From positions 186,001 to 250,000 of the forward strand of contig NIVC01000845.1 in assembly GCA_002269645.1 (NCBI GenBank): 64,000 nucleotides of DNA. The letters are read 5' to 3'. Under the pieces are notes generated by a model, which saw only the letters and a program-made list of their open reading frames with translations, was not told the DNA's origin and searched no databases. Positions 13,001-64,000 of this stretch are shown here, piece by piece. The position numbers and the translations under genes were made by a program. The stretch's first letter is position 1. Every line of letters begins with the position of its first letter. This stretch comes from Macrostomum lignano. Lineage: Eukaryota.

Positions 13001-14435
13001 GGTTGGAGTGACTGGGTTGGAGTGACCTGGTTGGAGTGATTAGGTTGGAGTGACTAGGTTGGAGTGACTAGGTTGGAGTGATTGGGTTGGAGTGACTAGG
13101 TTGGAGTGACTAGGTTGGAGTGACTAGATTGGAGTGATTGGGTTGGAGTGACTAGGTTGGAATGACTAGGTTGGAGTGACTGGGTTGGAGTGACCTGGTT
13201 GGAGTGATTAGATTGGAGTGACTAGGTTGGAGTGACTAGGTTGGAACGACTAGGTTGGAGTGACTAGTTTGGAGTGACTAGGTTGGAGTGACTGGGTTGG
13301 AGTGACCGGGTTGGAGTGACTGGGTTGGAGTGACCTGGTTGGAGTGATTAGGTTGGAGTGACTAGGTTGGAGTGACTAGGTTGGAGTGATTGGGTTGGAG
13401 TGACTAGGTTGGAGTGACTAGATTGGAGTGATTGGGTTGGAGTGACTAGGTTGGAATGACTAGGTTGGAGTGACTGGGTTGGAGTGACCTGGTTGGAGTG
13501 ATTAGATTGGAGTGACTAGGTTGGAGTGACTAGGTTGGAGTCGCTGGGTTGGAGTGACCGGGTTGGAGTGATTAGGTTGGAGTGACTGGGTTGGAGTGAC
13601 CGGGTTGGAGTGACTAGGTTGGAGTGACTGGGTTGGAGTGACTAGGTTGGAGTGACTGGGTTGGAGTGACTAGGTTGGAGTGACTGGGTTGGAGTGACTA
13701 GGTTGGAGTGACTGGGTTGGAGTGACCGGGTTGGAGTGACTGGGTTGGAGTGACCTGGTTGGAGTGATTAGGTTGGAGTGACTAAGTTGGAGTGACTAGA
13801 TTGGAGTGACTAGGTTGGAGTGACTAGGTTGGAGTGACTAGGTTGGAGTGACTGGGTTGGAGTGACTAGGTTGGAGTGACTAGGTTGGAGTGACTGGGTT
13901 GGAGTGACTAGGTTGGAGTGACTAGGTTGGAGTGACTAGGTTGGAGTGACCGGGTTGGAGTGACCGGGTTGGAGTGATTAGGTTGAATGAGGATGAGAGT
14001 AGTATCTAACTGACTGTGGCTTATTGGGACTGACTATCTGAGAGTGACTTATTGAGAGTGACTATCTGACAGAGAATTATTGAGAGTGACTATCTGAGAG
14101 TGACTTCACCCCGGCCGGCCCTCAGAGAGGTGAAGCTGTGGCGAGTGCACCTGTTCACCGGCATCCAGCTGGGCTGCTTCGCTCTGCTGTGGGTCGTCAA
14201 GAAGATCTCCCTGATCAGCATCGCCTTCCCACTGATGGTGCTGTCACTGTGCTTCGCCCGCAAGCTGCTGGACTACGTGTTCACCAGGAATGAGCTTCGC
14301 CTGCTGGACGACCTGCTGCCCGAGCAGAAATTGGAGGAGACCATCCGACTGCGTCGACGCAGCCGCATGTCCACGGCCGTGGACCTCGAAGAGCTCGCCC
14401 AGGCCGAAGATGACGAGCAAGAGAAAGCCGTTTAA
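4078..14435 (+). CDS. SLC4-family bicarbonate transporter, Na+-coupled (NBC/NDCBE-like), 9 exons, about 966 aa
   Basis: Exons 4078-4183, 4783-5226, 6363-6673, 7041-7282, 8143-8368, 9369-10035, 11408-11646, 12424-12779, 14126-14435. All introns are GT-AG and phases join (2901 nt). Motifs: [63 protein letters not shown], Cys-containing loop 3, [22 protein letters not shown]-like segment, RVHLFT. Exon 1 is supported only by ATG, donor and phase fit. Confidence 0.93.
4365..4754. repeat. SLC4 intron 1: 26-bp unit then 18-bp unit (GAGTGACAAGATAGCCTA)
   Basis: Direct tandem copies. Confidence 0.93.
5255..6345. repeat. SLC4 intron 2: 19-bp unit (GAGTGACCAGTCTAGAACA)
   Basis: About 57 copies. Confidence 0.97.
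6835..7020. repeat. SLC4 intron 3: 34-bp unit (GAGTGACAATATTCAGGAGTGCCAGACAGAGAGA)
   Basis: About 5 copies. Confidence 0.92.
7290..8080. repeat. SLC4 intron 4: 13-bp unit (GAGTGAC(C/A)GATT(G/T/A)) with a 172-bp higher-order repeat
   Basis: Variant marker TTGGAGAGAC at 7601, 7773 and 7945. Confidence 0.95.
8407..9222. repeat. SLC4 intron 5: 18/21-bp units (CTCAAGGATGCTGATGATG)
   Basis: 39-bp composite period in the first half. Confidence 0.93.
10040..11365. repeat. SLC4 intron 6: 14-bp unit (GAGTTGGAGCTGAG, 10040-10490) then 15/16-bp units (GCAAAGCTGTGAATG / GACAATGCTGTGAATG, 10535-11365)
   Basis: Two adjacent arrays. Confidence 0.95.
11675..12385. repeat. SLC4 intron 7: 15-bp unit (CCACTAATCCACAAT)
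   Basis: About 47 copies. Confidence 0.95.
12782..13985. repeat. SLC4 intron 8: 14-bp unit (GAGTGACTAGGTTG)
   Basis: About 85 copies, starting inside the splice donor. Confidence 0.97.
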
Positions 14436-28933: not shown

Positions 28934-30232
28934 CGAGGGGAAGTCAAAAAGTAATGATAATTTTGTTGTCACGAGTGTCAAACTTCAAATGGAAATCTAA
29001 TTTTCTACATAGTCCCCCTCCAGGGTCAGACGCTTCTCCATGCGGTGTCGCCATCTCTCCAGGCCGTTCACATAGAACTCAGGAGGCTGTGCAACAAGCC
29101 ACTGTACAGTAGCCTTTTTGGCAGCCTCTTTGTCCTCATTTTGGTCTCCTTTTGATTGCTTCCTTCAGCTTGGGAAGCAAAAAAAGTCCGATGGAGCCAA
29201 ACCAGGGCTATATGGAGGATGCTGGAGGATTTCCCAGCGGAAATCTTGCAGGGCTTCATGGCAGAGCCGAGAAGTGTGGGCTGGTGCATTGTCGTGGTGA
29301 AAGAGAATCCCAAGGTGCAGCTTGCCAGGTTGCTTTTTGGCCAGTTCGGTGCAGAGCTTTCGCAGAAGCGACGCATAATAGGTGGCATTGATGGTCTTCT
29401 GGCTTTCCAAGAAGTCCACCATCACCACTCCCTCAACATCCCAGAGAATCGTCGCCAAGACCTTCGCTGCAGACAGTTCCGCATGGAACTTCTTGGGGCC
29501 TGCTGAACCTCGTGGCAGCCACTCCTTGGATTGGAACTTGGACTCGGGATTGTACTGAAATATCCATGTTTCATCCTCGTCACTAAGCGCTGGTAGCTGT
29601 TTTCTGAACCAGCGTCCAAGCGGTTCAGCAGGTTGATGGCACACTCAGTGTGCTGAACCCAGTGTTCAGGCCGCAACAGCCTCGGGACCCAGCGGGCACT
29701 CAGCTTGCTCAGACCAAGACAGTCCGTCACAATGGAGTGAGCACTGCCATGAGCAATGCCCACTTTGTCAGCAATATTGTCTATGGTCACGCGCCGATCC
29801 AGCTCAATCACTGGCTGCACAGCTGCCACACTTTCCCCTGTGCGCGATGTTGTGGGCCTTCCCGACCGCTGGGCGTCTTCCATGGACTCTCGGCCTTCCT
29901 TAAAAGCCTGAATCCAGCAATAAATGGTTGGATCTGGTGGAGCAGTGTCCCCATAGACCTTCTTCAAAGCGTCAATGATTTCGGCTGGCTTCCAACCAAG
30001 CTATACAATAAACGTCACGTTAGTATGAGCTTCGATTTTTGAATTTTCCATTGCTGAAAGGGTATACTGTGATTAGAGTGTCACCATGCAAGCATCAATA
30101 ACTTTAGAAGAACCAAAACTCTGTCAAATAAAGATTAAAAGATGTTTTTTCAAATGAAACCAGTTGCAGTTCAATAACTCTGATATTTTAGGCGTGAGAG
30201 CAAAATTATCATTACTTTTTGACTTCCCCTCG
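28934..30232 (-). mobile_element. Tc1/mariner DNA transposon (mariner, D,D34D type), full length 1299 bp
   Basis: Perfect 32-bp TIRs CGAGGGGAAGTCAAAAAGTAATGATAATTTTG at 28934-28965 and 30201-30232, TA target duplications at 28932-28933 and 30233-30234, internal transposase. Confidence 0.97.
28997..30051 (-). pseudogene. Disrupted mariner transposase
   Basis: ATG at 30051 (MENSKIEAH..). Motifs SGRP, WVPRLL, DETW, HDNAPAH, HPPYSPGLAPSDFF and C-terminus ..LEGDYVEN*. Lesions: TAG at 30001-30003, a frameshift near 29580, TGA at 29165-29167. Confidence 0.93.
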
Positions 30233-47135: not shown

Positions 47136-48992
47136 ACTGTCTGTCTGTCTGTCTGACTGTCTGTCTGTCTGTCTGTCTGCCTGTTTGTCTGTCTGTCTGC
47201 CTGTCTGTCTGTCTGTCTGACTGTCTGTCTGTCTGTCTGTCTGCCTGTTTGTCTGTCTGTCTGTCTGCCTGTCTGTCTATCTGTCTGTCTGTCTGCCTGA
47301 CACTCCCTGTCCATTGTCCTGAACCCGTACCCACTCTGTCTCCCCGCCCTCGCAGCTGGTTCGGTGTAGAGAAGGACTACAACGTGCTGGTGATGGACCT
47401 GCTGGGCCCCAGCCTGGAGGACCTGTTCAGCTTCTGCTCTCGCCGGTTCACTATGAAGACCGTGCTGATGCTGGCCGACCAGATGATCAACCGCATCGAG
47501 TACGTGCACAACAAGAACTTCATTCACCGCGACATCAAGCCGGACAACTTCCTCATGGGAATCGGGCGTCACTGCAACAAGGTGAGTCTGAGGGTGCAAA
47601 TAATCCACATTCCCCAGCTTAATTATCCCCAATCCTTAACCAAAAATCCCAATCCCCAACCCAAAAATCCCAATCCCCAACCCAAAAATCCTAATCCCCA
47701 ACACAATAATCCAAATCCCCAACGCTATAATCCAAATCCCCAACGCAATAATCCAAATCCCCAACCCAATAATCCGAATTCCTTATTCCCATTGAAGAAT
47801 TTGAATCCCTTAACTAAGAAATTCCAACCTCTTGCTCCACAAATCCTAATCCGTAATGAAAAATCCTATAAATCGATTTCCGCCCCGCCCGCGCCAGGTG
47901 TTCATCATTGACTTCGGATTGGCTAAAAAGTTTCGCGATAGTCGTTCCGGAAAGCACATCCCTTACCGGTGAGCATGTGATTAGTCATCAAGAGATCTGT
48001 TATCTAAAAATGATTAATGAATTAGTCTGGTATAAAATGTCCCAAACTCAATTCCCGCAGCGAGGACAAGAACCTCACTGGCACGGCCCGCTACGCTTCA
48101 ATCAATGCTCACCTGGGCATCGAACAGTCCAGACGCGATGACATGGAAGCGCTTGGCTACGTGCTGATGTACTTTAATAGGGGCTCGCTACCGTGGCAGG
48201 GACTGCAGGTGAAATCCTTTCCGGCTTTGTTTCATTCATCTACGTTGCTTCATATTCACCGATTATTGCTCATCTCCATTGCTCATAGTTTCGTAAATCT
48301 AAGGCTTCATAGTTTCATATTCATTACTCTTTTTACTCATAGCTTTTATCTATGGTCATGGCTAGAAAACCCATGGTCAGAGCTTATAGATCTATGATCA
48401 TAGCTCATAAATGTATGGTCAAAGCTCATAGATCTATGGTCATAGTTTATTAATCCATGATCATTGGTCATAAATCCATGGTCATTGGTCATAAATCCAT
48501 GGTCATTGGTCATAAATCCATGGTCATTGGTCATAAATCCATGGTCATAGCTCATAGATCTATGGTCATAGTTCATTAATCCATGATCATTGGTAATAAA
48601 TCATAGCTCATAAATCCCGGCTCATAGCTTATGTCTCACAGTTCATCACTATATACTATCTTAATTCCCAATCCCAAAGCCTCAATTCCCATAACTCCCA
48701 ACCGCAGGCCAACACCAAGAAGCAGAAGTACCAGAAGATCAGCGAGAAGAAGATGTCAACGCCAGTCGAGTCCCTGTGCAAAGGCTTCCCGGCCGAGTTC
48801 ACCATGTACTTGAACTATTGCCGCGGCCTTCGATTCGAGGAGGCTCCCGACTATATGTACCTCAGACAGCTCTTCCGGATCCTGTTCCGCACTCTCAATC
48901 ACCAGTTCGACTACACCTTTGACTGGACTCTGCTCAAACAGCGGAGCAGCGCAGCCGCCACCGCCGCCTCCGCTTCGGGCGCCGCTCAGTGA
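43453..48992 (+). CDS. csnk1a1: Casein kinase I alpha, 6 exons, 318 aa
   Basis: Exons 43453-43572, 46314-46420, 47356-47581, 47898-47968, 48061-48208, 48708-48992 join in frame. Motifs [59 protein letters not shown] and [14 protein letters not shown] (alpha-type). Confidence 0.96.
46451..47297. repeat. (GTCT)n microsatellite in CK1 intron 2
   Basis: Direct observation. Confidence 0.97.
47635..47800. repeat. 21-bp repeat (AATCCCAATCCCCAACCCAAA) in CK1 intron 3
   Basis: About 7 degenerate copies. Confidence 0.85.
48350..48610. repeat. 21-bp repeat (ATGGTCATTGGTCATAAATCC) in CK1 intron 5
   Basis: About 12 degenerate copies. Confidence 0.87.
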
Positions 48993-49079: not shown

Positions 49080-51035
49080 TAAGGGTTAGTGTGGGATTGT
49101 AAGGATTAGTGTGGGATTGTAAGGATTAGTGTGGGATTGTAAGGATTAGTGTGGGATTTTAAGGATTAGTGTGGGATTTTAAGGGTTAGTGTGGGATTTT
49201 AAGGATTGGTGTGGGATTTTAAGGATTAGTGTGGGATTGTAAGGATTAGTGTGGGATTGTAAGGATTAGTGTGGGATTTTAAGGATTAGTGTGGGATTTT
49301 AAGGATTAGTGTGGGATTGTAAGGATTAGTGTGGGATTGTAAGGATTAGTGTGGGATTGTAAGGATTAGTGTGGGATTTTAAGGATTAGTGTGGGATTGT
49401 AAGGATTAGTGTGGGATTGTAAGGATTAGTGTGGGATTGTAAGGATTAGTGTGGGATTTTAAGGATTAGTGTGGGATTTTAAGGGTTAGTGTGGGATTTT
49501 AAGGATTAGTGTGGGAATTTAAGGATTAGTGTGGGATTTTCAGGATTAGTGTGGGAATTTAAGGATTAGTGTGGGATTTTAAGGATTAGTGTGGGAATTT
49601 AAGGATTAGTGTGGGATTTTAAGGATTAGTGTGGGATTTTAAGGATTAGTGTGGGAATTTAAGGATTAGTGTGGGATTTTAAGGATTAGTGTGGGATTTT
49701 AAGGATTCGTGTGGGATTTTAAGGATTAGTGTGGGATTTTAAGGATTCGTGTGGGATTTTAAGGATTAGTGTGGGATTTTAAGGATTAGTGTGGGATTTT
49801 AAGGATTAGTGTGGGAATTTAAGGATTAGTGTGGGATTTTAAGGATTAGTGTGGGAATTTAAGGATTAGTGTGGGAATTTAAGGGTTAGTGTGGGATTTT
49901 AAGGATTCGTGTGGGATTTTAAGGATTAGTGTGGGAATTTCAGGATTAGTGTGGGATTTTCAGGATTAGTATGGGAATTTAAGGATTAGTGTGGGATTTT
50001 CAGGATTAGTATGGGATTTTCAGGATTAGTATGGGATTTTCAGGATTAGTGTGGGATTTTAAGGATTAGTGTGGGATTTTAAGGATTAGTGTGGGAATTT
50101 AAGGATTAGTGTGGGAATTTAAGGGTTAGTGTGGGATTTTAAGGATTCGTGTGGGATTTTAAGGATTAGTGTGGGAATTTCAGGATTAGTGTGGGATTTT
50201 CAGGATTAGTATGGGAATTTAAGGATTAGTGTGGGATTTTCAGGATTAGTATGGGATTTTCAGGATTAGTATGGGATTTTCAGGATTAGTGTGGGATTTT
50301 AAGGATTAGTGTGGGAATTTAAGGATTAGTGTGGGAATTTAAGGATTAGTGTGGGAATTTAAGGATTAGTGTGGGATTTTCAGGATTAGTATGGGATTTT
50401 AAGGATTAGTGTGGGAATTTAAGGATTAGTGTGGGATTTTCAGGATTAGTATGGGATTTTCAGGATTAGTATGGGATTTTCAGGATTAGTGTGGGATTTT
50501 AAGGATTAGTGTGGGAATTTAAGGATTAGTGTGGGATTTTCAGGATTAGTATGGGATTTTCAGGATTAGTGTGGGATTTTTAGGAATAGTTTGGGAATTT
50601 AAGATTTGTGTGGGAATTTAAGGATTAGTGTGGGATTTTCAGGATTAGTAAGGGATTTTCAGGATTAGTGTGGGATTTTTAGGAATAGTTTGGGAATTTA
50701 AGGATTCGTGTGGGATTTTAAGGATTCGTGTGGGATTTTAAGGATTCGTGTGGGATTTTAAGGGTTAGTGTGAGATTTTAAGAATTCGTGTGGGATTTTA
50801 AGGGTTAGTGTGGGAATTTAAGGATAAGTGTGGGATTTAAAAAAATTAGTGTGGGATTTTCAGGATTAGTGTGGGATTTTTAGGAATAGTTTGGGAATTT
50901 AAGGATTAGTGTGGGATTTTAAGGATTCGTGTGGGATTTTAAGGATTAGTGTGGGATTTTAAAGATTAGAGTGGGATTTTAGGATTAGTGTGGGAATTTT
51001 AAAGACTAGTGTGGGATTTTAAGGATTAGTGTGGA
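49080..51035. repeat. 20-bp minisatellite (AAGGATTAGTGTGGGATTTT) 3' of CK1
   Basis: About 97 copies. Confidence 0.97.
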
Positions 51036-52494
51036 ATTTAAAGAAATATTTATTATTTATAATTTTATTAGCTAGTACAGATAAAGTAATCTATAGAGTT
51101 TTCTGTAAGATTAAGAGTTCTGATTTAATGGATATGGCATTACAATGTTATCAGACTGAATAAAATGCCCTTGAATAATTAGCAACTAATAACAACGGAT
51201 CATTTCAGATTGCGAGCAGCCAACCAATAGACAGACAGTCAGCTGAGTTGAGCTGAGTTGAACAACGGACTCTCAATGCCCCGCAAATTTTCAATTGAAT
51301 TACCAATTAAAACCCCCATCCCCTTGTTGATTGACGCTTGTTCGCTTCGAACCAAATTAAAGCTTTCTTAAGCTCTCGTTGCGAGAAGATTCGTTTTTAA
51401 GTAATAATTGTTTCCGTACTTGCGTAATGTGTTGCTTTCTTTTGTATGCCTATCAATTCTTCGTAATAAGCATAGATAATATATAACTTAGATTTTTGGT
51501 CACTCTCCTGAGAGTTACTACTCTCAGGTCAGTAGTAGAATTTGCGTGTGCAAAGAAAAATTTTCATCGGCGCGTTAAATTAAATTGGAAAGAGAAAAAA
51601 CTATGTATTTGTACATGAGTTTTTTAATGACTGGGGTCTAGACACCGTCCGCTGATGCAAATCTGGCTGAAATTAACTATTTCGTTGAGTTTGTACTACT
51701 TACATCTGGACCTAAGAGTAGTGCGTCAATTAAATTTGGTGAAGTGACAAATCTAGGCATATGTATTATCTGTGCTAATAAGTAATGAATATTTTCTATG
51801 CAGTTTTCTTATTGTTTTAAATTTCAACTTTTTCCCAGGCCTTGTAGGGCCGGATTCTGAAATCCTCGCTACGAAGCTAAAAGAGGTTTATTGTTTTTGT
51901 TTTTTCTTTTAGTTGCAAAATCCCCGTCAACCTACTATTAGTAATAAAAGAGATTCCAAAATATCAGTAAACTTTATAAAATAGCGCGCACTTAGCCTAC
52001 TTGAAGTAGGATAGTGGAAATGTTTCTATTGTCAAACAAACTCTACAGTAGTTTATTTATTATTAATTAATATTGTTGTCTATCCTCTGCGCAAGCACAC
52101 TCAGACTTTATTTTTTAGGGGTCTATTCTTATAGAAAGATAGCTGTTTTTTATGGTTTAATAGCCGTCTTTACTTTTATTAAATGTACTATTACTGCGTT
52201 TGATGCTGCAAACCTGTTGTTTAATAACTCCATAAAAATGCTGTTTTAGTAAGGTTATTAAATGACTATGCTCCTATTATATTACTATAGTCGTATGTGT
52301 AGCCAGTGAAAAATTATTTCAAAATAATAATACATTGATGCAACTGGCAACAAGCGGCAAGTTCACTTGCTTTACGCAAAGTTTAATAATAAATCTGTAT
52401 TATAATATTATTATTTATTCTGTGAATTGCTACCTGGGTCTTATTAATGTTTCTGCTTTCATTATAGACCTGAGATCTGACTCTGATTCTCGGA

Positions 52495-52980
52495 GAGAAT
52501 TGAGTAGGTTGTGAGTGAATTGGGTAGTCTGTGAGAGAATTGGGTAGGTTGTGAGAGAATTGGGTAGGCTGTGAGAGAATTGGGTAGGCTGTGAGAGAAT
52601 TGGGTAGGTTGTGAGAGAATTGGGTAGGTTGTGAGAGAATTGGGTAGGTTGTGAGAGAATTGGGTAGGCTGTGAGAGAATTAGGTAGGTTGTGAGAGAAT
52701 TGGCTAGGCTGTGAGAGAATTGGATAAGTTGTGAGAGAATTGGCTAGGCTGTGGGAGAATTGGGTAGGTTGTGAGAGAATTGGGTAGGTTGTGAGAGAAT
52801 TGGCTAGGCTGTGGGAGAATTGGGTAGGTTGTGAGAGAATTGGGTAGGTTGTGAGAGAATTGGCTAGGCTGTGGGAGAATTGGGTAGGTTGTGAGAGAAT
52901 TGGGTAGGTTGTGAGAGAATTGGCTAGGCTGTGGGAGAATTGGTTCGGCTTTGAGCTAACATGGAGGGGCTGTGAGAGAA
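52495..52980. repeat. 20-bp minisatellite (GTGAGAGAATTGGGTAGGTT)
   Basis: About 24 copies. Confidence 0.95.
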
Positions 52981-53389: not shown

Positions 53390-56300
53390 ATGGAAAATTT
53401 GATTCAATTGTTTGTCCGCGGCTTCAAAGGCAACACCACGACTATAGATATTCACAAGGTGAGCTTGCTAGGCTCTACATGTACTTTTATACTGTTTTTG
53501 TCCTTCAGCTGGACCCCTTCCTCTCCTTCAGCTGGACCCCCTCCTCTCCTTCAGCTGGACCCCCTCCTCTCCTTCAGCTGGACCCCCTCTCCTTCAGCTG
53601 GACCCCCTCTCCTTCAGCTGTAACCCCGCCCTGCTACATTCATTTCGATGAGACGCCGGTACGATACATTCCACACCCACCGCGCCGCTCTTGCGCAGGA
53701 TGCCCAGATCAAGGATCTGTTTCGCAAGCTGGAGGATAAGACAGGACTCAAGCCGGGTGCCTACCAGATGGTCTACGTGAGCAAGACTATCGACTTTGAG
53801 CAGCACAAGGACAAGCACCTGACCGAGTTTCACCTGGAGAATCACTCCAATCTCTTCATGGTGCTGCGTCTGCACGGCGGATCCAAGGTGAGTTCACTGC
53901 GAAGCGAGAGCACCCTCCGACGCCACATGCCAAAGGGAGAATCTCGGTAGGAGAATCCCGTTGGAGAAACCGGTGGGAGAACCCGGTGGGATAACTCCGG
54001 TGGGAGAATCCCGGTGGGAGAACCCGGTGGGATGACTCCGGTGGGAGAATCCCGATGGGAGAACTCGGTGGGAGAATCCCGGTGAGAGAATCCCGGTGGG
54101 AGAATCCCGGTAGGAGAATCCCGGTGGCAGAACCGGTGGAATAACTCCGGTGGGTGAATCCAGGTGAGAGAATCCCGGCAGAATCCCGGTAGGAGAATCC
54201 CGTTAGGAGAATCCCTGTGGGAGAATCCCGGTGGCAGAACCGGTGGAATAACTCCGGTGGGTGAATCCAGGTGAGAGAATCCCGGCAGAATCCCGGTAGG
54301 AGAATCCCGTTAGGAGAATCCCTGTGGGAGAATCCCGGTGGCAGAACCGGTGGAATAACTCCGGTGGGAGAATCCTGGTGAAAGAATCCCGGTGGCAGAA
54401 TCCCGGTAGGAGAATCCCTGTGAGAAAACCCAGTGGCAGAATTCAGGTGAGAGAATCACTGTGGAAAAAATCCCTTTGGCAGAATCCCGGTGGGAGAATC
54501 CGGGTGAAAGAATCCCGGTGGTAGAACCAGTGGTGTAAGAATCCTTGTGAGAGAATCCCGGTGGCAGAATCCGGGTGGCAGAATCCCGTTAGGAGAATCC
54601 CGTTAGGAGAATCCCTGTGGGAGAATCCCGGTGGCAGAATCCCGGTGGGAGAATCCCGGTGGCAGAATCCCGGTGGGAGAATCCGGTTGAAAGAATCCCG
54701 GTGGTAGAACCAGTGGTGTAAGAATCCTTGTGAGAGAATCCCGGTGGGAGAATCCGGGTGGCAGAATCCCGTTAGGAGAATCCCTGTGGGAGAATCCCGG
54801 TGGCAGAATCCCGGTGGCAGAATCCCGGTGGGAGAATCCCGGTGTGGGAATCCTGTTGAGAGAAGGTAGAAAAGTTCTAGCCAGAGAATCTCACGGACCA
54901 GGAAAATTTTTTTTCTCACAGGAGCTGGACGACTGCGTTGAGCTCACCGACCTGCCGGACATGATCACCTGGGACGATGACAAGGACGGCAAGCGGGCGA
55001 AGATGCCCTGCGGCCACGCCATCGGCCCGGAAAGCCTCACCAGCTATTGCCACAGTCTGCTGGACACGGGGCGCTACCGGTTCCTCTGCCCCTGGGTGGA
55101 CCCCGCCAACGCGGGCGTCGGCTGCCCCGCCGAGTGGGACTTCGTGATCGTGCGACGGCTGGCCGTGCTCACCGACGCTGAGAAGCGCGAGTTTGAGCGC
55201 AAAATCTCTGAGAACTACCTGCGACGGGCGGTGAATATTCAGGCAAGTATTGGCAGGCAAACGCTAGGCCTATAAGGTACAAAAACATACAGACATACAA
55301 ACAGACAGACAACCAGACACCCAGACATCCAAATGGACACTAAGACACCCAGATGGACACTAAGACACCCAAATGGACACTAAGACACCCAGATGGACAC
55401 TAAGACACCCAGATGGACACTAAGACATCCAAATGGACACTAAGACTTCCAAATGGACACTAAGACATACAAATAGACACTAAGACATCCAAATGGACAC
55501 TAAGACACCCAAATGGACACTAAGACACCCAGATGGACACTAAGACACCCAGATGGACACTAAGACATCCAAATGGACACTAAGACATCCAAATGGACAC
55601 TAAGACATCCAAATGGACACTAAGACTTCAAATGGACACTAAGACATCCAAATGGACACTAAGACACCCAGATGGACACTAAGACTTCCAAATGGACACT
55701 AAGACTTCAAATGGACACTAAAACATCCAAATGGACACTAAGACTTCAAATGGACACTAAAACATCCAAATGGACACTGAGACACCCAGAAAGACAGATG
55801 GACACCCGGACAGACAGATAGACATTAACACATTCAGACTCGCTCTCAACCCCGCAGGAGTGCCCAGGCTGCAGGTCGTTCTGCCAGCGCCGCAGCGGTC
55901 GCGATCGCCGAATGATCTGTCCGGTGTGCTCAGAGACGGACAAAGGGCGGCTGTTCGAGTTCTGCTGGTACTGCTTGAACAAGTGGCGCACCCCGGGAAC
56001 GACCAAGTGCGGCAACGACATCTGCTCGGGCAAGGACCCTCGGATCGCCATTCTGGCCGCGGCGAAGGTCAAGACGATCGTCGGCGTGCCCGGTAGGTCA
56101 TCAGGGCAATTAGCAATTCTTTATAAACCTAAACCTGTGCCATTCGAAATTCTCATGGATAACAACAGACTCGTTAAAGTAGCGTTAAAGTGCAATTTTT
56201 ATAACCATAATCTCGTCTCCAGACGTGCCCGGCCGCCGCGCCTGCATCAAGTGCGGCATGATCATCGAGCACGTGACCGCCTGCAAGCACATGAAGTGCG

Positions 56301-56425
56301 TCTGCGACCAAGAGTTCTGCTTCATCTGCTTGAAGCCGAAGAACGACAGGGGCAACTGGCAGTGCGGCAGCTACAGGGAGCCATGCGCTGTGGCACCGAG
56401 GCAAACCGAGGTTCCCGGGGAGTGA
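53390..56425 (+). CDS. Ubiquitin-like domain + RBR (degenerate RING1-IBR-RING2) E3 ligase-like protein, copy 1, 338 aa
   Basis: Exons 53390-53458, 53699-53887, 54922-55242, 55858-56092, 56223-56425. UBL ends LRLHGG. IBR: ECPGC..ICPVC..FCWYC. RING2: CIKC..IEHVTACKHMKC.C..EFCFIC. Intron 3 has a GC donor. Confidence 0.9.
53500..53622. repeat. 20/23-bp repeat (CCTTCAGCTGGACCCCCTCCTCT) in UBL-RBR copy 1 intron 1
   Basis: Six copies. Confidence 0.9.
53940..54870. repeat. About 14-bp minisatellite (GGGAGAATCCCGGT) in UBL-RBR copy 1 intron 2
   Basis: Degenerate tandem copies. Confidence 0.93.
55315..55790. repeat. 20-bp minisatellite (ATGGACACTAAGACATCCAA) in UBL-RBR copy 1 intron 3
   Basis: About 23 copies. 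Confidence 0.94.
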
Positions 56426-56511
56426 GGCGCATCTCTGCTGGCGTGACTGATGCGGCGGAGAATAAAGACTTTGAGATGGAACACTTGATGGAGCTGGTGA
56501 TGGAAGATCTG

Positions 56512-57385
56512 TATGAGATTGAGGATCTGTGGGAGATGGGAGCTGAGATTGAGGATCTGTGGGAGATGGGAGCTGAGATTGAGGATCTGTGGGAGACGGG
56601 AGCTGAGATTGAGGATCTGTGGGAGACGGGAGCTGAGATTGGGGATCTGTGGGAGATAGGAGCTGAGATTGAGGATCTGTGGGAGATGGGAGCTGAGATT
56701 GAGGATCTGTGGGAGATGGGAGCTGAGATTGAGGATCTGTGGGAGACGGGAGCTGAGATTGAGGATCTGTGGGAGATGGGAGCTGAGATTGAGGATCTGT
56801 GGGAGACGGGAGCTGAGATTGAGGGTCTGTGGGAAATGGGAGCTGAGATTGGGGATCTGTGGGAAATGGGAGCTGAGATTGGGGATCTGTGGGAAATGGG
56901 AGCTGAGATTGGGGATCTGTGGGAAATGGGAGCTGAGATTGGGGATCTGTGGGAAATGGGAGCTGAGATTTGGGATCTGTGGAAAATGGGAGCTGAGATT
57001 GGGGATCTGTGGAAAATGGGAGCTGAGATTGGGGATCTGTGGAAAATGGGAGCTGAGATTGGGGATCTGTGGGAGATGGGAGCTGAGATTGGGGATCTGT
57101 GGGAGATGGGAGCTGAGATTGGGGATCTGTGGGAGACGGGAGCTGAGATTGAGGATCTGTGGGAGATGGGAGCTGAGATTGAGGATCTGTGGGAGACGGG
57201 AGCTGAGATTGGGGATCTGTGGGAGATGGAAGCTGAGATTGGGGATCTGTGGGAAATGGGAGTTGAGATTGGGGATCTGTGGGAGATGGGAGCTGAGATT
57301 GGGGATCTGTGGGAGATGGGAGCTGAGATTGGGGATCTGTGGGAGATGGGAGCTGAGATTGGGGATCTGTGGGAGATGGGGGGGC
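56512..57385. repeat. 30-bp minisatellite (GAGATTGGGGATCTGTGGGAGATGGGAGCT) 3' of UBL-RBR copy 1
   Basis: About 29 copies. Confidence 0.96.
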
Positions 57386-57785
57386 TGGTGATGGCAAATC
57401 ATCGAGTAAATTGTTTTTTTAGTAAAAATCACCCAAGTAAAAATTAATATTTTATTTATTAGAAAGTTGATGTTTTGAATTGTTACGGTTGTACATGTGT
57501 GACCCGTGTGTTTTTAGTTTTTTAGTTGACTGTTTGGTTTGACTTTAAGTAATTGCATCTGCTCGTACTTGCGTACTTGAATTTTACTATTTATATTCCG
57601 GTGTATCAAGAGACAAAGCGATAAATAAATTCAACTTTAATCGTCTTTAATTCCATTAAAATTCGCGTTTTAGTTCGAGTCGAAATTTGCACTCAAAAAG
57701 GAAACTTTGAGTTAGTCATTTTTTCAAATCATCTGTTAAGCAGAACTGGTCGCGGTTAGTACGCAGTTGATATGCTTGTATTTAA

Positions 57786-57830
57786 GGTGGGTTGCTCAGT
57801 GGTTCCGGGTTCGATTCGTTGTGACCCCAC
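57786..57830 (+). mobile_element. tRNA-derived SINE-like head with anticodon arm missing
   Basis: GGTGGGTTGCTCAGTGGTT (A-box-like) directly followed by CCGGGTTCGATTCG (B-box). Confidence 0.4.
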
Positions 57831-58189
57831 TGCAGCGGAGGGCAGCAGATCTGAACTGCGATAGAAATTCAGGGAAAGAGAGCTGCGTTGCCCCACATCG
57901 CCAGTGCTGTACAATCGTTGTACCTACATCCGTGATTGTAGTGGCTCTTAAAGTGTACATCCTAGCTTGTTGTGTTTGAGCTATGGAGCTACGAACAGTC
58001 TTATTTGATAATGGAATGTACATTAGCAGTAGTAGACAGATGGTACCTAGTAACAGGCCAGAAAACTGTGCAAAGAAAGGCATTTATACCGAGAAAGCTA
58101 GGACCCAGGCTTTTAGTTGAGTCAAACTGGCAATCTGAGTTAATACATGTAAGTTTTCCTTTGACTTGTACTTGATAAGCTTGGTAAAA

Positions 58190-60708
58190 ATGGATAATTT
58201 ATTACAGATTTTCGTGAAGGATTTCAACAGCCGCACAGAGACAGTTAGCATTCTCAAGGTAAGAACTATGAGCACCTACTATTGTTTGTACTTACCTGTA
58301 CGAGGAAAACAATTAGGAACAGAGCTAGTGAGCAGTTTCAGTTCACAGGCAAACCCCGTTCTAACAAAGGATTACCCGTACTCTCTTAGTCTAACATATC
58401 CAGTGCCAACCCCGTAACGATGTGAAAGAAAAATGAAGCAATGCACTCTCCACGACCTATAGGATGCTCAGATCAAGGATCTGTTTAGCAAGCTGGAAGA
58501 AAAGACGGGACTCGAACCTGGCACCTACCAGATGGTCTACGCGAGCAAGACTATCGACTTTGAACAGCACAAAGACAAGCATCTGTCCGACTTTCACTTG
58601 GAGAATCACGCCAATCTCCACATGGTGCTGCGTCTACCAGGTGGCTCAAGACTGAGAGTGAGTAATACCTGTACCGGTTCATCACAGAATTCGGTATCGC
58701 TTCTGAACTTCTTAAATTCCGATATTTGCACGCAACTATAATTCTGTGTCAAGGAGCTGGACGACTGCATTGAGCTCACCGAGGAGCCGGACATGATCAC
58801 CTGGGACGACGACAAAGACAACTTGCGAGTCAAAATGCCCTGCGGCCACGCCATCGGACCGGACAGCCTCACCATGTACTGTCGCAGCCTGCTGGACTCC
58901 GGCCTCTACCGCTTCCTCTGCCCCTGGCTGGACCCGAACGATTCCAGAGTTGGCTGCCCCGTCGAATGGGACTTCGTCGTTATACGACGGCTGGCCGTGC
59001 TTAGCGACGAGGAGAGGCAAGAGTTTGAACGAAAGATTTCCGAGAACTATTTGCGACGGGCGGTGAATATTCAGGTAAGAAACGTTCGATTATAAGAAAC
59101 TTAATACTTTATAGAAATGCAAGATTGTCAGCTGACAGATATCCCGTGACGCCGCAAACGTTAACAGCGTGTTTTCTGTTGCAACTGGCAGCTTTAAAAG
59201 TGATTCATTTCCGAACGGTTCCTCACACAGGAGTGCCCGAGCTGTCACTCCTACTGCAAGCGCGTCAGCTCGCGCGATCGTCGCGTGGTCTGCCCCGCCT
59301 GTTCCAGCGGAGGCAGGCAGCGTTTCGAGTTCTGCTGGTACTGCTTGAACAAGTGGCGCAGTGCTGGCACGGACAAGTGCGGCAATGACATCTGCTCCGG
59401 CAAGGACCCTCGGATCGCCATTCTGGCCGCGGCGCCGGTCAAAGAGATTGTCGGCGTGAAGGGTCAGTTGGCCTGCAGGGGGGTGCACTTTAAGTATGAC
59501 GTAGTACGGGCGTATGGAGGGGGGAGCACCAGGAGGGAGGACTTTTCACCGTCGGGGCGTCAGTGTGATGACGGAATGCTTGAGAGACCAGCTGAGGATG
59601 TCCTGCAGTTTAGGCTTTCCCACTGTTGAGGATCCAGAAGCTCCGCCTGCGTGAAGGCCAGTGACCAACGAAGTCAGAGCTGATGCAGACGCATGTGGTT
59701 GACGTCCTGATGAAATCTGGAGGTCTAGCAAGGCCGCTCTGAGGCGCAGTGCTGATTGGCACACACGAGGTGTATTGAGCTCACTAGCGCTTATACGAGC
59801 TAGAAAAAATCTGACCTTCTGGCAGAATCGTTGAATATCTCGACGGTCTGGAGGGCTAGCGACTTGATTCTTGTTTGAGAAGGTTTACAACAGAAAGTTA
59901 GCCCCTGCTCCTAAATTTCGTGTGCCTGCGTGGTTCCCTTACGGCGCAGCAAAAAATTGTCAGGGGATTCCCCCCTTGGTAGTTCGATAGGCGGAAAAAA
60001 TGGCTTGTTGGCTTGTTAATGAGGCCGCGCTCAAAATCGAACCCAGGGTGCTTGGTGAGAGAATCAAGGGCGTTAACCGCTGAGCTGCTCTGCCAAAGAA
60101 TACGCCCGCAGACACTACGTAATATTCGTCTTCAGACCGTGTTAGACTGTGTTAGATCAATTAACTCTGAGTCCAAAATCCCGACATGAAGCATAAAGCC
60201 AAGTTTCGAAATCGAACGACCTCGAACCACTGGTCCCCCTTCTCGACTTGAGGCAAACCCTCTGCTGACAAGCATTAGGGAGACAAGCATTAAAGCTAAG
60301 GGAGGTGGCATTAAATACATGTATGAAGCGGCTAGCGTGCGGCGAGATGAAGACCGCTTGTCCTTTAATAAAGTGCTGCGACTGGGCCTTTTACGGCTCT
60401 AGTTTATTTGGGCCATAGACAGTTTGAGCAGCAGTGGCTGGCTCTGTCAAAAGTACGTGTCCACTACATGTAGATAATGTTTTATCCCCAAAATCACGCA
60501 TCCAGACGTGCCCGGTCGCCGCGCCTGCATCCACTGCGGCATGATCATCGAGCACGTTCGTTTTTGCAAGCACATGAAGTGCATCTGCGGCCAAGAGTTC
60601 TGCTTCATCTGCTTAAAGCCGAAGAACAGCGAGGGCAACTGGCAGTGCGGCAGCTTCAACGCCCCGTGTACAATTGCTCCAAGGCAAACTCAGGTGCCCG
60701 GAGAATGA
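58190..60708 (+). CDS. Ubiquitin-like domain + RBR E3 ligase-like protein, copy 2, 339 aa
   Basis: Exons 58190-58258, 58463-58657, 58754-59074, 59231-59462, 60506-60708. Same intron positions and phases as copy 1; UBL ends LRLPGG. Confidence 0.9.
59995..60094 (-). mobile_element. tRNA-like sequence (SINE head or tRNA pseudogene) inside intron 4 of UBL-RBR copy 2
   Basis: Minus strand GGCAGAGCAGCTCAGCGGTTAACG..CTCTCACC..GGGTTCGATTTTGAGCGCGGCC, then a T6 run about 22 nt downstream. Stems pair imperfectly. Confidence 0.55.
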
Positions 60709-61014: not shown

Positions 61015-62200
61015 GATCGTTGGTTAATGTCTCTCGTGAGGTCTGAATTCTCAGTTGGTTAATGTCTCTCGTGAGGTCTGAATTCTCAGTTGGTTAATGT
61101 CTCTCGTGAGGTCTCAATTCTCAGTTGGTTAATGTCTCTCGTGAGGTATGAATTCTCAGTTGGTTAATGTCTCTCGTGAGGTCTCAATTCTCAGTTGGTT
61201 AATGTCTCTCGTGAGGTCTGAATTCTCAGTTGGTTAATGTCTCTCGTGAGGTCTCAATTCTCAGTTGGTTAATGTCTCTCGTGAGGTATGAATTCTCAGT
61301 TGGTTAATGTCTCTCGTGAGGTCTCAATTCTCAGTTGGTTAATGTCTCTCGTGAGGTCTCAATTCTCAGTTGGTTAATGTCTCTCGTGAGGTCTCAATTC
61401 TCAGTTGGTTAATGTCTCTCGTGAGGTCTCAATTCTCAGTTGGTTAATGTCTCTCGTGAGGTCTCAATTCTCAGTTGGTTAATGTCTCTCGTGAGGTCTC
61501 AATTCTCAGTTGGTTAATGTCTCTCGTGAGGTCTCAATTCTCAGTTGGTTAATGTCTCTCGTGAGGTCTCAATTCTCAGTTGGTTAATGTCTCTCGTGAG
61601 GTCTCAATTCTCAGTTGGTTAATGTCTCTCGTGAGGTCTCAATTCTCAGTTGGTTAATGTCTCTCGTGAGGTCTCAATTCTCAGTTGGTTAATGTCTCTC
61701 GTGAGGTCTCAATTCTCAGTTGGTTAATGTCTCTCGTGAGGTCTCCATTCTCAGTTGGTTAATGTCTCTCGTGAGGTCTGAATTCTCAGTTGGTTAATGT
61801 CTCTCGTGAGGTCTCAATTCTCAGTTGGTTAATGTCTCTCGTGAGGTCTCAATTCTCAGTTGGTTAATGTCTCTCGTGAGGTCTCAATTCTCAGTTGGTT
61901 AATGTCTCTCGTGAGGTCTGAATTCTCAGTTGGTTAATGTCTCTCGTGAGGTCTCAATTCTCAGTTGGTTAATGTCTCTCGTGAGGTCTCAATTCTCAGT
62001 TGGTTAATGTCTCTCGTGAGGTCTCAATTCTCAGTTGGTTAATGTCGCTCGTGAGGTCTCAATTCTCAGTTGGTTAATCTCTCGTGAGGTCTCAATTCTC
62101 AGTTGGTTAATGTCTCTCGTGAGGTCTCAATTCTCAGTTGGTTAATGTCTCTCGTGAGGTCTCAATTCTCAGTTGGTTAATGTCTCTCGTGAGGTCTGGT
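61015..62200. repeat. 35-bp minisatellite (CTCAGTTGGTTAATGTCTCTCGTGAGGTCTCAATT)
   Basis: About 34 near-identical copies. Confidence 0.97.
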
Positions 62201-63018: not shown

Positions 63019-63606
63019 TTATCTCTTGCGCTTTCTAGTTCCCTGTCCGGATTTAGCAGGAGGCCTCTCAGCTTCGAGCTTCTTCGATTCAACCTCACCA
63101 TCAGCGGCGGCGTCGGCAGGTGTCTCAGTCGATAATGACGCCGGCTTGACCTCATCAACAATGGCGGGCGACTTCAAATGCTGGAATCTGGCCAAGTCTG
63201 CAGCGAACAGGACGGTGTGCGCCCAGCCGGCGTGCGGCTGCCACAGGCTGGGGAAGAAGTCGCTAATTGATTGATAGGCCGACTCGGTCAGGCTCTTTGT
63301 GGAGGCTGGTAGGCCGTACAGGCTGCGAGCGATTCGCATCACGTGCACATCCACTGGCACCAGGTGCAGCTGGTCCAGCGACATCAGGCAGACGCAATCG
63401 GCCACTTTACGGCCAACCCCGGTGAATTCTTTGGTGAGGCAGCGTCGGATCTCGTCTGGCTGCGCCGAGCCGCGCAGGCTGTGCAGCCAATCGGCGCCGC
63501 CCAGGTCGAGCAGCCGCCTGGCGCTCTCGACTACAAATTTGGCGCGATAGCCGAAGCCCAACTCGCGGAGTCGCGGTTCCGCCTCTGGTGAGCACAGGGC
63601 CGACAG
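63019..63606 (-). CDS. ogg1: 8-oxoguanine DNA glycosylase, terminal exon (rest lies beyond the window)
   Basis: Acceptor at 63607-63608. LRELGFGYRAKFV, HhH motif GVGRKVADCVCLMSL with catalytic K, VPVDVHV with catalytic D, AGWAHTVLF, basic tail KRKR. Confidence 0.93.
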   Translation of the reverse strand: MSALCSPEAEPRLRELGFGYRAKFVVESARRLLDLGGADWLHSLRGSAQPDEIRRCLTKEFTGVGRKVADCVCLMSLDQLHLVPVDVHVMRIARSLYGLPASTKSLTESAYQSISDFFPSLWQPHAGWAHTVLFAADLARFQHLKSPAIVDEVKPASLSTETPADAAADGEVESKKLEAERPPAKSGQGTRKRKR

Positions 63607-63649: not shown

Positions 63650-64000
63650 CTGTTGGGGTGGTGGGTGCTGCCCTGGATTCCCGGGACTGATGGGGTGGTG
63701 GGTGCTGCTGCCCTGGATTCCCGGGACTGATGATGTGGTGGTGGGTGCTGCTGCCCTGGATTCCCGGGACTGATGGGGTGGTGGGTGCTGCTGCCTTGGA
63801 TTCCCGGGACTGATGATGGGGTGGCAGGTGCTGCTGCCCTGGATTCCCGGGACTGATGATGGGGTGGTAGGTGCTGCTGCCCTGGATTCCCGGGACTGAT
63901 GATGGGGTGGTAGGTGCTGCTGCCCTGGATTCCCGCGACTGATGATGGGGTGGTGGGTGCTGCTGCCCTGGATTCCTGCGACTGATGATGGGGTGGTGGG
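63650..64000. repeat. About 39-42-bp minisatellite in OGG1 intron (GTGCTGCTGCCCTGGATTCCCGGGACTGATGATGGGGTGGTGG)
   Basis: About 9 copies; runs off the right edge. Confidence 0.93.

What the first reader, a model, noticed from the sequence alone, without database searches (positions are those of the whole stretch)
53390..60708. Tandem pair of ubiquitin-like/RBR ligase fusions with a ubiquitin-type di-Gly junction: possible self-contained modifier plus E3 precursor
Seen: both genes encode an ~84-aa UBL (QLFVRGFKGNTTTIDI..LEDKTGL..VLRLHGG in copy 1, LRLPGG in copy 2). It ends 2-4 codons before a phase-0 intron and is followed by RING1-IBR-RING2 with an intact catalytic-type CKHM motif. Established: ubiquitin, NEDD8 and ISG15 precursors are cut after L-R-x-R-G-G-type tails, while the Parkin UBL lacks a terminal GG and stays attached as an autoinhibitory domain. 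Inference: these proteins may be processed into a free conjugatable UBL plus its own ligase, or the tail may be a DUB/E1 decoy. The H versus P difference at the -3 position could make only one paralog cleavable. The exon-bounded UBL also suggests exon shuffling onto an RBR scaffold.
Basis: partly seen in the sequence, partly recalled or inferred. Interest (0 to 1): 0.75.

Follow-up and report, generated by a model that had tools for sequence, protein, structure and literature searches.

The report
Ubiquitin-like modifier fused to its ligase
Two neighbouring flatworm genes each encode a small ubiquitin-like protein with a cut-here "Gly-Gly" tail joined to an RBR-type ligase; relatives from ciliates to mammals suggest that this is an undescribed protein-tagging system made as one precursor.

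Summary
Window 53390-56425 and 58190-60708 (+ strand) carry two five-exon paralogues (338 and 339 aa, 76% identical, dN/dS about 0.25) of Macrostomum lignano. Each has a ubiquitin-fold domain ending LRL(H/P)GG, a short linker, a one-zinc RING1-like domain, an IBR, and a RING2 with the catalytic Cys.

The family is large, old and, as far as I could search, undescribed. It occurs in animals, Glomeromycota fungi and ciliates. With a UBL profile that leaves out the tail, 125 of 131 homologues have GG at the exact place. R (-5) and L (-4) are nearly fixed, -3 is free (Pro commonest), and +1 is never Pro.

In vertebrates the same module is split exactly at GG. A free UBL gene ends GG plus 1-9 residues (tenrec, fugu, elephant shark) next to an RBR-only gene, with a USP protease gene alongside. 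In amphioxus and two hemichordates a divergent E2 (HLN in place of HPN) sits beside the fused gene.

Best reading: a precursor cut after GG into a dedicated modifier plus its own RBR ligase. Cleavage is about 0.75 likely and conjugation about 0.55; neither has been shown.

The parts
53390..56425 (+). Gene 1 (UBL-GG-RBR, 338 aa), five exons: 53390-53458, 53699-53887, 54922-55242, 55858-56092, 56223-56425
   Evidence: Splice-consistent model. The translation equals the annotated M. lignano protein P0001.
53390..53881 (+). Gene 1 ubiquitin-like domain (aa 1-84), split by intron 1 (53459-53698), ending LRLHGG
   Evidence: Aligns with ubiquitin 1-76. AF2 model pLDDT 93, with the UBL superposing on ubiquitin at rmsd 1.3-1.7 A.
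53876..53881 (+). Gene 1 Gly83-Gly84 codons (GGC GGA): the predicted processing site lies after 53881
   Evidence: Invariant in alignment A1. GG is at this place in 125/131 homologues.
54922..55242 (+). Gene 1 exon 3: post-GG linker motif (ELDDCVELTDLPDMITWDDD), one-zinc RING1-like domain (C116, H118, C142, C154) and the RING1-IBR helix
   Evidence: Conservation. The AF2 model of this exon best matches RING1 of HOIL-1L, parkin and HHARI.
55858..56092 (+). Gene 1 exon 4: IBR domain and IBR-RING2 linker helix
   Evidence: Pfam IBR/IBR_2. Invariant Cys 195, 198, 214, 217, 229, 232, 249.
56223..56425 (+). Gene 1 exon 5: RING2 (Rcat) with catalytic-position Cys292 (56282-56284, motif ACKHMKC) and conserved C-terminal tail APRQTEVPGE
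   Evidence: Pfam IBR hit 274-311. Alignment to ARIH1 RING2. C292 invariant.
58190..60708 (+). Gene 2 (UBL-GG-RBR, 339 aa), five exons: 58190-58258, 58463-58657, 58754-59074, 59231-59462, 60506-60708
   Evidence: Model, equal to P0003. 76% identical to gene 1, dS 0.63, dN/dS 0.25.
58640..58645 (+). Gene 2 Gly83-Gly84 codons (GGT GGC) in LRLPGG
60565..60567 (+). Gene 2 catalytic-position Cys293 codon (FCKHMKC)

Best explanation
These are tandem paralogues of an ancient, unnamed eukaryotic gene family. In it, a ubiquitin-type modifier is translated as the N-terminal part of a precursor whose C-terminal part is its own RBR-type ligase.

Proposed mechanism:
1. A deubiquitinase-type protease cuts after Gly84 (LRL-H/P-GG | S). 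This releases a roughly 9.5 kDa UBL with a free Gly-Gly carboxyl end, and a roughly 29 kDa RBR enzyme that starts at the conserved 'S/A..LDD.VELT..PDMITWDDD' segment.
2. The free UBL is activated by an E1. Its retained Arg at the Ub-R72 position fits a UBA1/UBA6/UBA7-type enzyme.
3. It is passed to an E2. In hemichordates and amphioxus a divergent HLN-type E2 is encoded next door.
4. It is taken over as a thioester on the RING2 Cys (C292/C293) of the RBR and transferred to substrates.
5. In vertebrates a USP encoded beside the split UBL and RBR genes would process and/or remove it.

Shown: the gene structure, the domains, the family-wide conservation of R-L-x-G-G, the natural split at exactly GG, and the linkage to E2 and USP genes.

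Inferred: cleavage (about 0.75), conjugation through this RBR (about 0.55), the identity of the E1, and the substrates and biological role (unknown).
For: - Ubiquitin fold with the tail in register with Ub L71-G76.
- With a UBL profile that excludes the tail, 125/131 homologues have GG at the projected place. R is at -5 in 118/125 and L at -4 in 114/125. Position -3 is free. Position +1 is S/A/E/G and never Pro in 125 cases. The linker after GG is 13-109 residues long.
- The range covers flatworm, hemichordates, amphioxus, cnidarians, molluscs, annelid, brachiopod, Glomeromycota and ciliates. Fused ORFs sit on intron-less 1-1.8 kb contigs that I read as cDNA assemblies, so the fused mRNA is real.
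- Natural fission falls at GG. Free UBL genes are:
  - tenrec, an 86-aa UBL ending LQLPGG-A-stop with no splice donor, 1.86 kb upstream of an RBR-only gene;
  - fugu, a UBL ending MRLPGG-LPY-stop between a USP and the RBR;
  - elephant shark, an annotated 98-aa UBL ending LRLPGG-LESYKIETN-stop between a USP and two RBR genes.
- Vertebrate RBR proteins start (M..EKRYDPxDxTLKFV) where the fungal fused proteins continue after GG (GG-AE-EKRHDPNDGVELT).
- Fused proteins P0153 and P0178 carry the vertebrate-type UBL and RBR, linking the two forms.
- Ciliate members are UBL1(RLRGG)-UBL2(no GG)-RBR. UBLs placed behind large N-terminal domains have lost GG.
- An orthologous divergent E2 (IYHLNVSQ..GQVCL) lies head-to-head with the fused gene in amphioxus and Saccoglossus, and within 10 kb in Ptychodera.
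- A USP is adjacent in fugu, elephant shark and platypus, and is fused into one Elephantulus gene model.
- Both M. lignano copies are under purifying selection in the UBL (dN/dS 0.23) and in the RBR (0.27).
Against: - There is no experimental evidence of cleavage, of a free UBL or of conjugates in any species.
- No E2 or USP gene lies in the M. lignano window or in the 10 kb beyond it. None lies near the Actinia, Rhizophagus or Gigantopelta genes.
- Some distant members keep a UBL without GG, so the domain can work uncleaved.
- The tail and linker are modelled with moderate confidence (pLDDT about 75) rather than as disordered.
- Invertebrate fused UBLs are no closer in sequence to the vertebrate free UBLs than to ubiquitin. 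Their equivalence rests on the linked RBR and on intermediate fused forms.
- The homologues counted are not phylogenetically independent.
- No E1 has been identified.
Confidence: 0.55

Rival explanations
1. Uncleaved regulatory UBL. As in parkin or HOIL-1, the UBL stays attached and regulates the RBR in cis, by autoinhibition or as a built-in allosteric ubiquitin. R-L-x-G-G is conserved because the tail binds a groove of the protein's own RBR, or serves as a hinge.
For: - The overall architecture is closest to parkin.
- The linker is short, only 13-15 residues.
- The tail and linker are not modelled as disordered.
- Distant members carry GG-less UBLs directly before the RBR.
- From general knowledge, RBR ligases are commonly controlled by Ub/UBL binding.
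Against: - Integral UBLs of known RBRs have lost GG. Here GG, R(-5) and L(-4) are kept from ciliates to animals, while -3 and the linker vary freely, up to 109 residues.
- Pro never follows GG.
- Vertebrates encode the UBL as a separate protein ending GG plus a short extension.
- Ciliates carry both a GG-UBL and a GG-less UBL in one protein.
Confidence: 0.2
2. Cleaved but not conjugated. The UBL is removed by a DUB, as ubiquitin or FUBI is removed from ribosomal-protein fusions. It acts only as a folding or expression aid, or as a non-covalent activator or partner of the RBR. The RBR itself transfers ordinary ubiquitin.
For: - The architecture is the same as in UBA52/RPS27A/FAU precursors.
- No E1 has been identified.
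- In most species, including M. lignano, no dedicated E2 or USP is linked.
Against: - R at the Ub-R72 position and a hydrophobic patch (F12, V48, F76, V78 in gene 1) are retained, which a mere leader would not need.
- A divergent E2 is linked in three deuterostomes, and a USP in vertebrates.
- The vertebrate free UBL is kept as a separate gene next to the RBR for more than 400 My. A folding aid in cis would not explain that.
Confidence: 0.2
3. Decoy. The ubiquitin-like tail is bait for foreign or host DUBs or E1 enzymes, and is not a substrate of a normal processing or conjugation pathway.
For: Only the resemblance of LRLxGG to Ub and ISG15 tails.
Against: Conservation across free-living ciliates, fungi and animals, linkage to an E2 and a USP, and the split genes all point to an endogenous pathway.
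Confidence: 0.03
4. Annotation artefact. The UBL exons and the RBR exons are separate genes wrongly joined in M. lignano.
For: - In vertebrates they are separate genes.
- If intron 2 were retained, both M. lignano genes would give UBL-GG plus a 24-31-residue extension and a stop (read).
Against: - Splice sites are in frame and in phase in both paralogues.
- A close relative (P0002, 84% identical) and dozens of other homologues are complete fused ORFs on intron-less 1-1.8 kb contigs.
- In Saccoglossus and amphioxus one exon runs across the UBL/RBR junction.
Confidence: 0.02

Closest known systems
Parkin (UBL-RING0-RING1-IBR-RING2)
   Same: An N-terminal ubiquitin-fold domain followed by an RBR module with a catalytic Cys in RING2. 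It is the best whole-model structural match.
   Different: Parkin's UBL has no GG tail and stays attached as a regulator. Parkin has RING0, a long linker and a canonical two-zinc RING1. Here there is no RING0, RING1 has one zinc site, and the tail is R-L-x-G-G. Sequence similarity of the RBR part is marginal.
HOIL-1/RBCK1 (UBL-NZF-RBR)
   Same: UBL plus RBR. The RING1-helix model matches HOIL-1L best.
   Different: The HOIL-1 UBL lacks a processing tail and binds HOIP. There is no NZF here.
Ubiquitin/UBL fusion precursors: UBA52, RPS27A, FAU (FUBI-eS30)
   Same: An N-terminal Ub or UBL ending GG, translated in frame with an unrelated protein and (in those cases) cut by DUBs. The +1 residue is small and never Pro.
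   Different: The partner there is a ribosomal protein, and the Ub part of UBA52/RPS27A is ubiquitin itself. Here the UBL is family-specific (about 30% identical to Ub) and the partner is a ligase of the ubiquitin system.
ISG15 system (ISG15, UBE2L6, HERC5, USP18)
   Same: A UBL with an LRLRGG-type tail made with a C-terminal extension. It has its own E2 and its own USP, a patchy phyletic distribution and lineage-specific losses.
   Different: ISG15 is a di-UBL, is not fused to or linked with an RBR, and its E3 is a HECT. No interferon or immune link is shown for the present family.
Ariadne (ARIH1/2) RBR ligases
   Same: The nearest solved sequences for RING2 and the IBR (E 8e-4 and 2e-3). They have the same catalytic C-x-H-M motif.
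   Different: They have no UBL, have an Ariadne domain and a canonical RING1, and are activated by neddylated cullins.

Membership tests
RBR (RING1-IBR-RING2) E3 ligases | RING1: canonical cross-brace C3HC4 RING with two zinc sites | tested here: not met
   Only C116, H118, C142 and C154 are conserved, enough for one site. There is no first C-x2-C and no C5-x2-C6. The predicted fold still matches RBR RING1 domains best (TMq 0.57, prob 0.97, but E only 0.07).
RBR (RING1-IBR-RING2) E3 ligases | IBR domain between the two RING-like domains | tested here: met
   The whole-protein Pfam IBR match is above cutoff (38.1 bits vs 24.3), though its best stretch is in RING2; the central region 191-237 gives only a sub-threshold IBR_2 hit. 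Seven invariant Cys lie at 195-249.
RBR (RING1-IBR-RING2) E3 ligases | RING2/Rcat with a catalytic Cys (C-x-H-M type) | tested here: met
   C279-x2-C282-x9-C292-K-H-M-x-C297. C292 is invariant. It aligns with the ARIH1 RING2 'GCNHMVC'.
RBR (RING1-IBR-RING2) E3 ligases | Forms an E3~Ub(l) thioester and transfers it | not testable with these tools
   Needs biochemistry.
Conjugatable (type I) ubiquitin-like modifiers | Beta-grasp ubiquitin fold | tested here: met
   Sequence alignment to Ub 1-76. Model rmsd 1.3-1.7 A, TMt about 0.9 to ubiquitin chains.
Conjugatable (type I) ubiquitin-like modifiers | C-terminal Gly-Gly, made as a precursor with residues after GG | tested here: met
   GG is at the Ub G75-G76 position in 125/131 homologues. 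Free-standing relatives end GG plus 1, 3 or 9 residues.
Conjugatable (type I) ubiquitin-like modifiers | Proteolytic exposure of GG | not testable with these tools
   Only indirect evidence: no Pro at +1, a variable linker, and natural split genes.
Conjugatable (type I) ubiquitin-like modifiers | Own E1/E2/E3 and deconjugating protease; covalent attachment to targets | tested here: inconclusive
   An E3 is fused or linked. A divergent E2 is linked in amphioxus, Saccoglossus and Ptychodera. A USP is linked in fugu, elephant shark and platypus. Neither is linked in M. lignano. No E1 is known and no conjugates are known.
Parkin subfamily | RING0 domain and a GG-less, retained UBL | tested here: not met
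   Only 13-15 residues lie between the UBL and the RING1 region, so there is no RING0. The UBL ends GG.
Ub/UBL-fusion precursors (UBA52/RPS27A/FAU type) | N-terminal Ub/UBL ending GG, in frame with an unrelated C-terminal protein | tested here: met
   Architecture shown. Cleavage was not tested.

The most novel reading that the evidence does not exclude
This is a previously unrecognised ubiquitin-like conjugation system of eukaryotes. It has a family-specific GG-tailed modifier and a dedicated one-zinc-RING1 RBR ligase. In some lineages it also has a dedicated HLN-type E2 and a dedicated USP. It is ancestrally made as a modifier-ligase precursor. It is kept in ciliates, Glomeromycota, many invertebrates, fishes, reptiles and some mammals, and lost in others; no hit from human, mouse, insect or nematode was listed in the searches.
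Probability: 0.4. Interest if true: 0.9.

Novelty: new variant of a known kind. Interest (0 to 1): 0.8.

Why it matters
Few ubiquitin-like modifiers are known, and each new one (for example UFM1 or FAT10) opened a field. Here the genome itself supplies the modifier, its E3, and in other lineages a candidate E2 and protease, so the whole pathway can be reconstituted from defined parts.

The fused form would be the first case I know of in which a modifier is made stoichiometrically with its own ligase. That arrangement suggests single-turnover or self-limiting tagging.

The family's one-zinc RING1 and HLN-type E2 also bear on how RBR ligases read E2~Ub(l). Its loss from the usual model organisms would explain why it was missed. 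M. lignano, zebrafish or fugu, and Saccoglossus offer tractable systems.

Tried and rejected
- Exon shuffling. Intron mapping in Saccoglossus and amphioxus shows no intron at the UBL/RBR boundary. The intron M. lignano shares with Saccoglossus lies inside the UBL. Rejected.
- H vs P at -3 as a cleavage switch. Pro is the commonest residue at that position family-wide and in the free vertebrate UBLs. Rejected.
- Literature. Searches for DDB_G0292642, ch211-212k18.15, and several combinations of RBR / ubiquitin-like / di-glycine / dedicated E2 / gene cluster / Macrostomum found nothing on this family. The only '212k18' hits concern another gene. Subscription journals are not covered.
- E2 or USP in the window. 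tblastn with the amphioxus E2, UbcH7 and the fugu USP found nothing. The genes called around the locus are CK1 and OGG1.
- Platypus. A UBL gene beside the RBR was not seen in an ORF list.
- Turtle. No neighbours were called within 10 kb, and the locus was not readable in scripts.
- Sequence linkage of vertebrate free UBLs to invertebrate fused UBLs. They are no closer to each other than to ubiquitin. The link rests on the RBR and on intermediate fused forms.
- tRNA/SINE in the long intron 4 of gene 2 and in the intergenic region. ARAGORN found none, and there is no repeat of these stretches within the window.
- Position of the UBL relative to the RBR in the AF2 model. It could not be examined, because coordinates and PAE are not returned.

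Full report
**What is there.**
The region is eukaryotic DNA with GT-AG introns full of minisatellites. I built two gene models on the + strand.
- Gene 1: exons 53390-53458, 53699-53887, 54922-55242, 55858-56092, 56223-56425, giving 338 aa. Intron 3 has a GC donor.
- Gene 2: exons 58190-58258, 58463-58657, 58754-59074, 59231-59462, 60506-60708, giving 339 aa.

The translations equal two annotated hypothetical proteins of the flatworm Macrostomum lignano (P0001 at 100% identity, and P0003). They lie on contig NIVC01000845.1, between a casein-kinase-1 gene and OGG1. The paralogues are 76% identical, with dS 0.63. dN/dS is 0.23 in the UBL and 0.27 in the rest, so both parts of both copies are under purifying selection.

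**Check of the observation.**
- Residues 1-84 align end to end with ubiquitin, with one 4-residue insert. LRLHGG (gene 1) and LRLPGG (gene 2) lie on Ub L71-G76, at about 28 bits per repeat and E about 1e-8 against single-ubiquitin chains.
- Pfam's ubiquitin model scores just under its cutoff, while IBR is significant.
- An AlphaFold2 model built on 66 homologues has mean pLDDT 93. Its UBL superposes on ubiquitin at 1.3-1.7 A, and the best whole-chain matches are parkin structures.
- RING2 has the RBR pattern C279-x2-C282-x9-C292-K-H-M-x-C297..., and C292 is invariant.

One correction concerns 'RING1'. It keeps only C116, H118, C142 and C154, which are ligands for one zinc, not two. A separate model of that exon (pLDDT 84) still finds RBR RING1 domains as its best structural neighbours: HOIL-1L, parkin and HHARI (TMq about 0.57, prob up to 0.97). 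The E-values are weak, 0.07-0.2.

**The family.**
A search with the whole protein finds full-length homologues at 45-56% identity. They come from hemichordates, amphioxus, cnidarians, molluscs, an annelid and Glomeromycota fungi. A search with the RBR part alone against 1.8 billion representatives gives 915 hits, 574 of them at E<=1e-10. More distant members include a brachiopod and ciliates, for example Stylonychia.

By sequence the RBR part is only marginally similar to any solved RBR (ARIH1 RING2, E 8e-4). Sources name these proteins 'uncharacterized', 'DDB_G0292642-like', or by loose analogy 'ARIH/RNF144/RNF217-like'. I found no paper on them. Subscription journals were not searchable.

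**Is GG conserved?**
To avoid circularity I built a profile of the UBL core that stops before the tail, and projected the tail position in every hit.
- Of 131 proteins whose UBL C-end is covered, 125 have GG at exactly that place.
- The residue at -5 (Ub R72) is R in 118/125.
- The residue at -4 (Ub L73) is L in 114/125.
- The residue at -3 (Ub R74) is free: P 30, L 25, R 20, H 20, K 13, and others.
- The residue after GG is S (65), A (20), E, G and others, and is never Pro.
- The linker from GG to the conserved 'PDMI' motif ranges from 13 to 109 residues.

From established knowledge, R72 is the main determinant of ubiquitin for its E1. L73 and G75-G76 are needed by DUBs. R74 is tolerant. Ub-Pro junctions resist DUBs. 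The pattern here is therefore the one expected for a tail read by ubiquitin-system enzymes, not for a mere hinge. The counts are not phylogenetically independent.

**Natural experiments.**
A homologue from an elephant shrew led to a vertebrate clade of this RBR (zebrafish si:ch211-212k18.15). It is present in sharks, ray-finned fishes, lungfish, amphibians, turtles, alligator, platypus, Afrotheria, Xenarthra, colugo and some primates. These proteins are 265-300 aa and have no UBL. A UBL gene with a GG tail nevertheless lies beside the RBR gene:
- Tenrec: an annotated 86-aa 'ubiquitin-like' gene ends ...LQLPGG-A-stop (DNA CCAGGCGGCGCCTGA, with no splice donor). It lies 1.86 kb upstream of the RBR gene on the same strand. 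An older manatee-type gene model fuses the RBR to such a UBL ending KLPGGA.
- Fugu: an unannotated two-exon UBL ends MRLPGG-LPY-stop. It sits between a USP gene and the RBR gene.
- Elephant shark: the order is USP, then an annotated 98-aa UBL ending LRLPGG-LESYKIETN-stop, then two RBR genes.
- Platypus: a USP is next to the RBR.
- Elephantulus: one gene model joins a USP N-terminal half to the RBR.

The vertebrate RBR proteins begin 'M..EKRYDPxDxTLKFV..DDI'. This is the same segment that follows GG in the fungal fused proteins ('GG-AE-EKRHDPNDGVELTNEPDMI'). The split therefore falls at the GG junction. Fused proteins with a vertebrate-type UBL and RBR also exist (P0153, P0178). Their UBLs are the closest relatives of the free vertebrate UBLs, at 55-60 bits versus 35-42 to ubiquitin.

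In ciliates the protein is UBL1(...RLRGG)-UBL2(no GG)-RBR. UBLs that sit behind a kinase, a B-box/coiled coil or long repeats have lost GG.

**A linked E2.**
- Amphioxus: a 151-aa E2 gene lies head-to-head, about 0.85 kb from the fused gene. Further E2 pieces accompany a further downstream 341-aa gene, which was not identified.
- Saccoglossus: a 153-aa E2 lies head-to-head, 531 bp away.
- Ptychodera: the same E2 ends 9.5 kb upstream, with another piece 4 kb downstream.

The three E2s are orthologous, at 69-74% identity over the C-terminal 81 residues. They share H-L-N in place of the HPN motif (IYHLNVSQ..GQVCL). They are far from housekeeping E2s: 88 bits to UBE2D1, and 26-37% identity to UbcH7.

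No E2 or USP is linked in M. lignano, Actinia, Rhizophagus or Gigantopelta.

**Interpretation.**
The most economical reading is that the M. lignano proteins are precursors. A DUB-type protease cuts after G84. This gives a free modifier with a GG end, and an RBR ligase equivalent to the vertebrate RBR-only protein. The modifier is then used by that ligase through its RING2 cysteine.

I put cleavage at about 0.75 and conjugation through this RBR at about 0.55. The main rivals are:
- an uncleaved cis-regulatory UBL, as in parkin (0.2);
- cleavage without conjugation, as in ribosomal-protein fusions (0.2).

A decoy role and an annotation artefact are unlikely. The fused ORFs occur on intron-less contigs that I read as cDNA assemblies, and one exon spans the junction in Saccoglossus and amphioxus. 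The biological role is unknown. An immune role is only a guess, based on the patchy distribution, the tandem duplications, and the resemblance to the ISG15/USP18 logic.

- H versus P at -3 does not predict cleavability. It is the one free tail position, and Pro is the commonest residue there.
- The intron just after GG is lineage-specific. Saccoglossus has a single intron, inside the UBL, at the same place as M. lignano intron 1. Amphioxus has one exon covering residues 26-146. The UBL is not an exon-bounded module, so exon shuffling is not indicated.

**Novelty and limits.**
UBL modifiers, UBL-fusion precursors and RBR ligases are all known kinds. A modifier fused to, or linked with, its own RBR ligase appears to be new. 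So do the dedicated E2 and USP in some lineages, and the one-zinc RING1. I could not test any biochemistry, could not inspect model coordinates, could not search the rest of the M. lignano genome, and could not search non-open literature.

Noticed in passing
window 50002-51043, 52493-52943, 53935-54864, 55323-55788, 56514-57380, 61019-62197, 63654-64000: There are long minisatellite arrays (units of 14-43 bp, 8-67 copies). They fill introns 2 and 3 and the 3' flank of gene 1, whereas the introns of gene 2 have none. Intron 1 of gene 1 holds a further short direct repeat at about 53500-53620. Many long 'ORFs' in the window are just translations of such repeats.
   Followed up: partly
window 55243-55857: Intron 3 of gene 1 has a GC donor (GCAAGT). 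The same intron in gene 2 has GT.
   Followed up: no
window 59463-60505: Intron 4 of gene 2 is 1043 bp, against 130 bp in gene 1. The extra DNA has no copy elsewhere in the window, and no tRNA was found in it.
   Followed up: partly
window 9369-14435 (+), 47249-47911 (+), 29165-29967 (-), 63019-63561 (-): Other coding pieces lie in the window: an SLC4-type anion-exchanger-like gene, a casein-kinase-1-like exon, a mariner-type transposase remnant, and an OGG1 (HhH-GPD) gene. CK1 and OGG1 are confirmed by the gene calls around the locus; the other two are my reading of the ORF translations and were not checked.
   Followed up: partly
L002 13419-13870 (- strand), Takifugu: A second, more ubiquitin-like UBL gene lies downstream of the fugu RBR. 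It ends QRLRGG and then has a 37-residue tail finishing CCIF, which looks like a CaaX prenylation box.
   Followed up: no
proteins P0047, P0050, P0094 (amphioxus): Some amphioxus paralogues carry linkers of about 100 residues between GG and the RBR. These linkers are low-complexity and rich in Gly, Asn, Thr and Asp.
   Followed up: no
proteins P0156, P0151, P0260, P0226: The same RBR type is also found behind other N-terminal modules: a macro-like domain, a protein-kinase-like domain plus a GG-less UBL, a B-box/coiled-coil TRIM-like region plus a GG-less UBL, and long repeats. These domain labels are my reading of the sequences and were not scanned against Pfam.
   Followed up: partly
gene 1 aa 326-338 (window about 56384-56422) and homologues: The C-terminal tail C-x-x-A-P-x-Q-T-x-(I/V)-P-G, followed by 0-2 residues, is strongly conserved (A329 and Q332 are invariant). 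Its function is unknown.
   Followed up: no
L005 14516-14635, 17062-17139, 21930-23161; L008 13406-14210; L003 18190-22850; L011 1-5307: The module is often tandemly duplicated. Examples are E2 pieces plus a further downstream gene in amphioxus, and extra RBR or UBL-RBR copies in Saccoglossus, elephant shark and the snail Gigantopelta. The M. lignano pair fits this pattern.
   Followed up: partly
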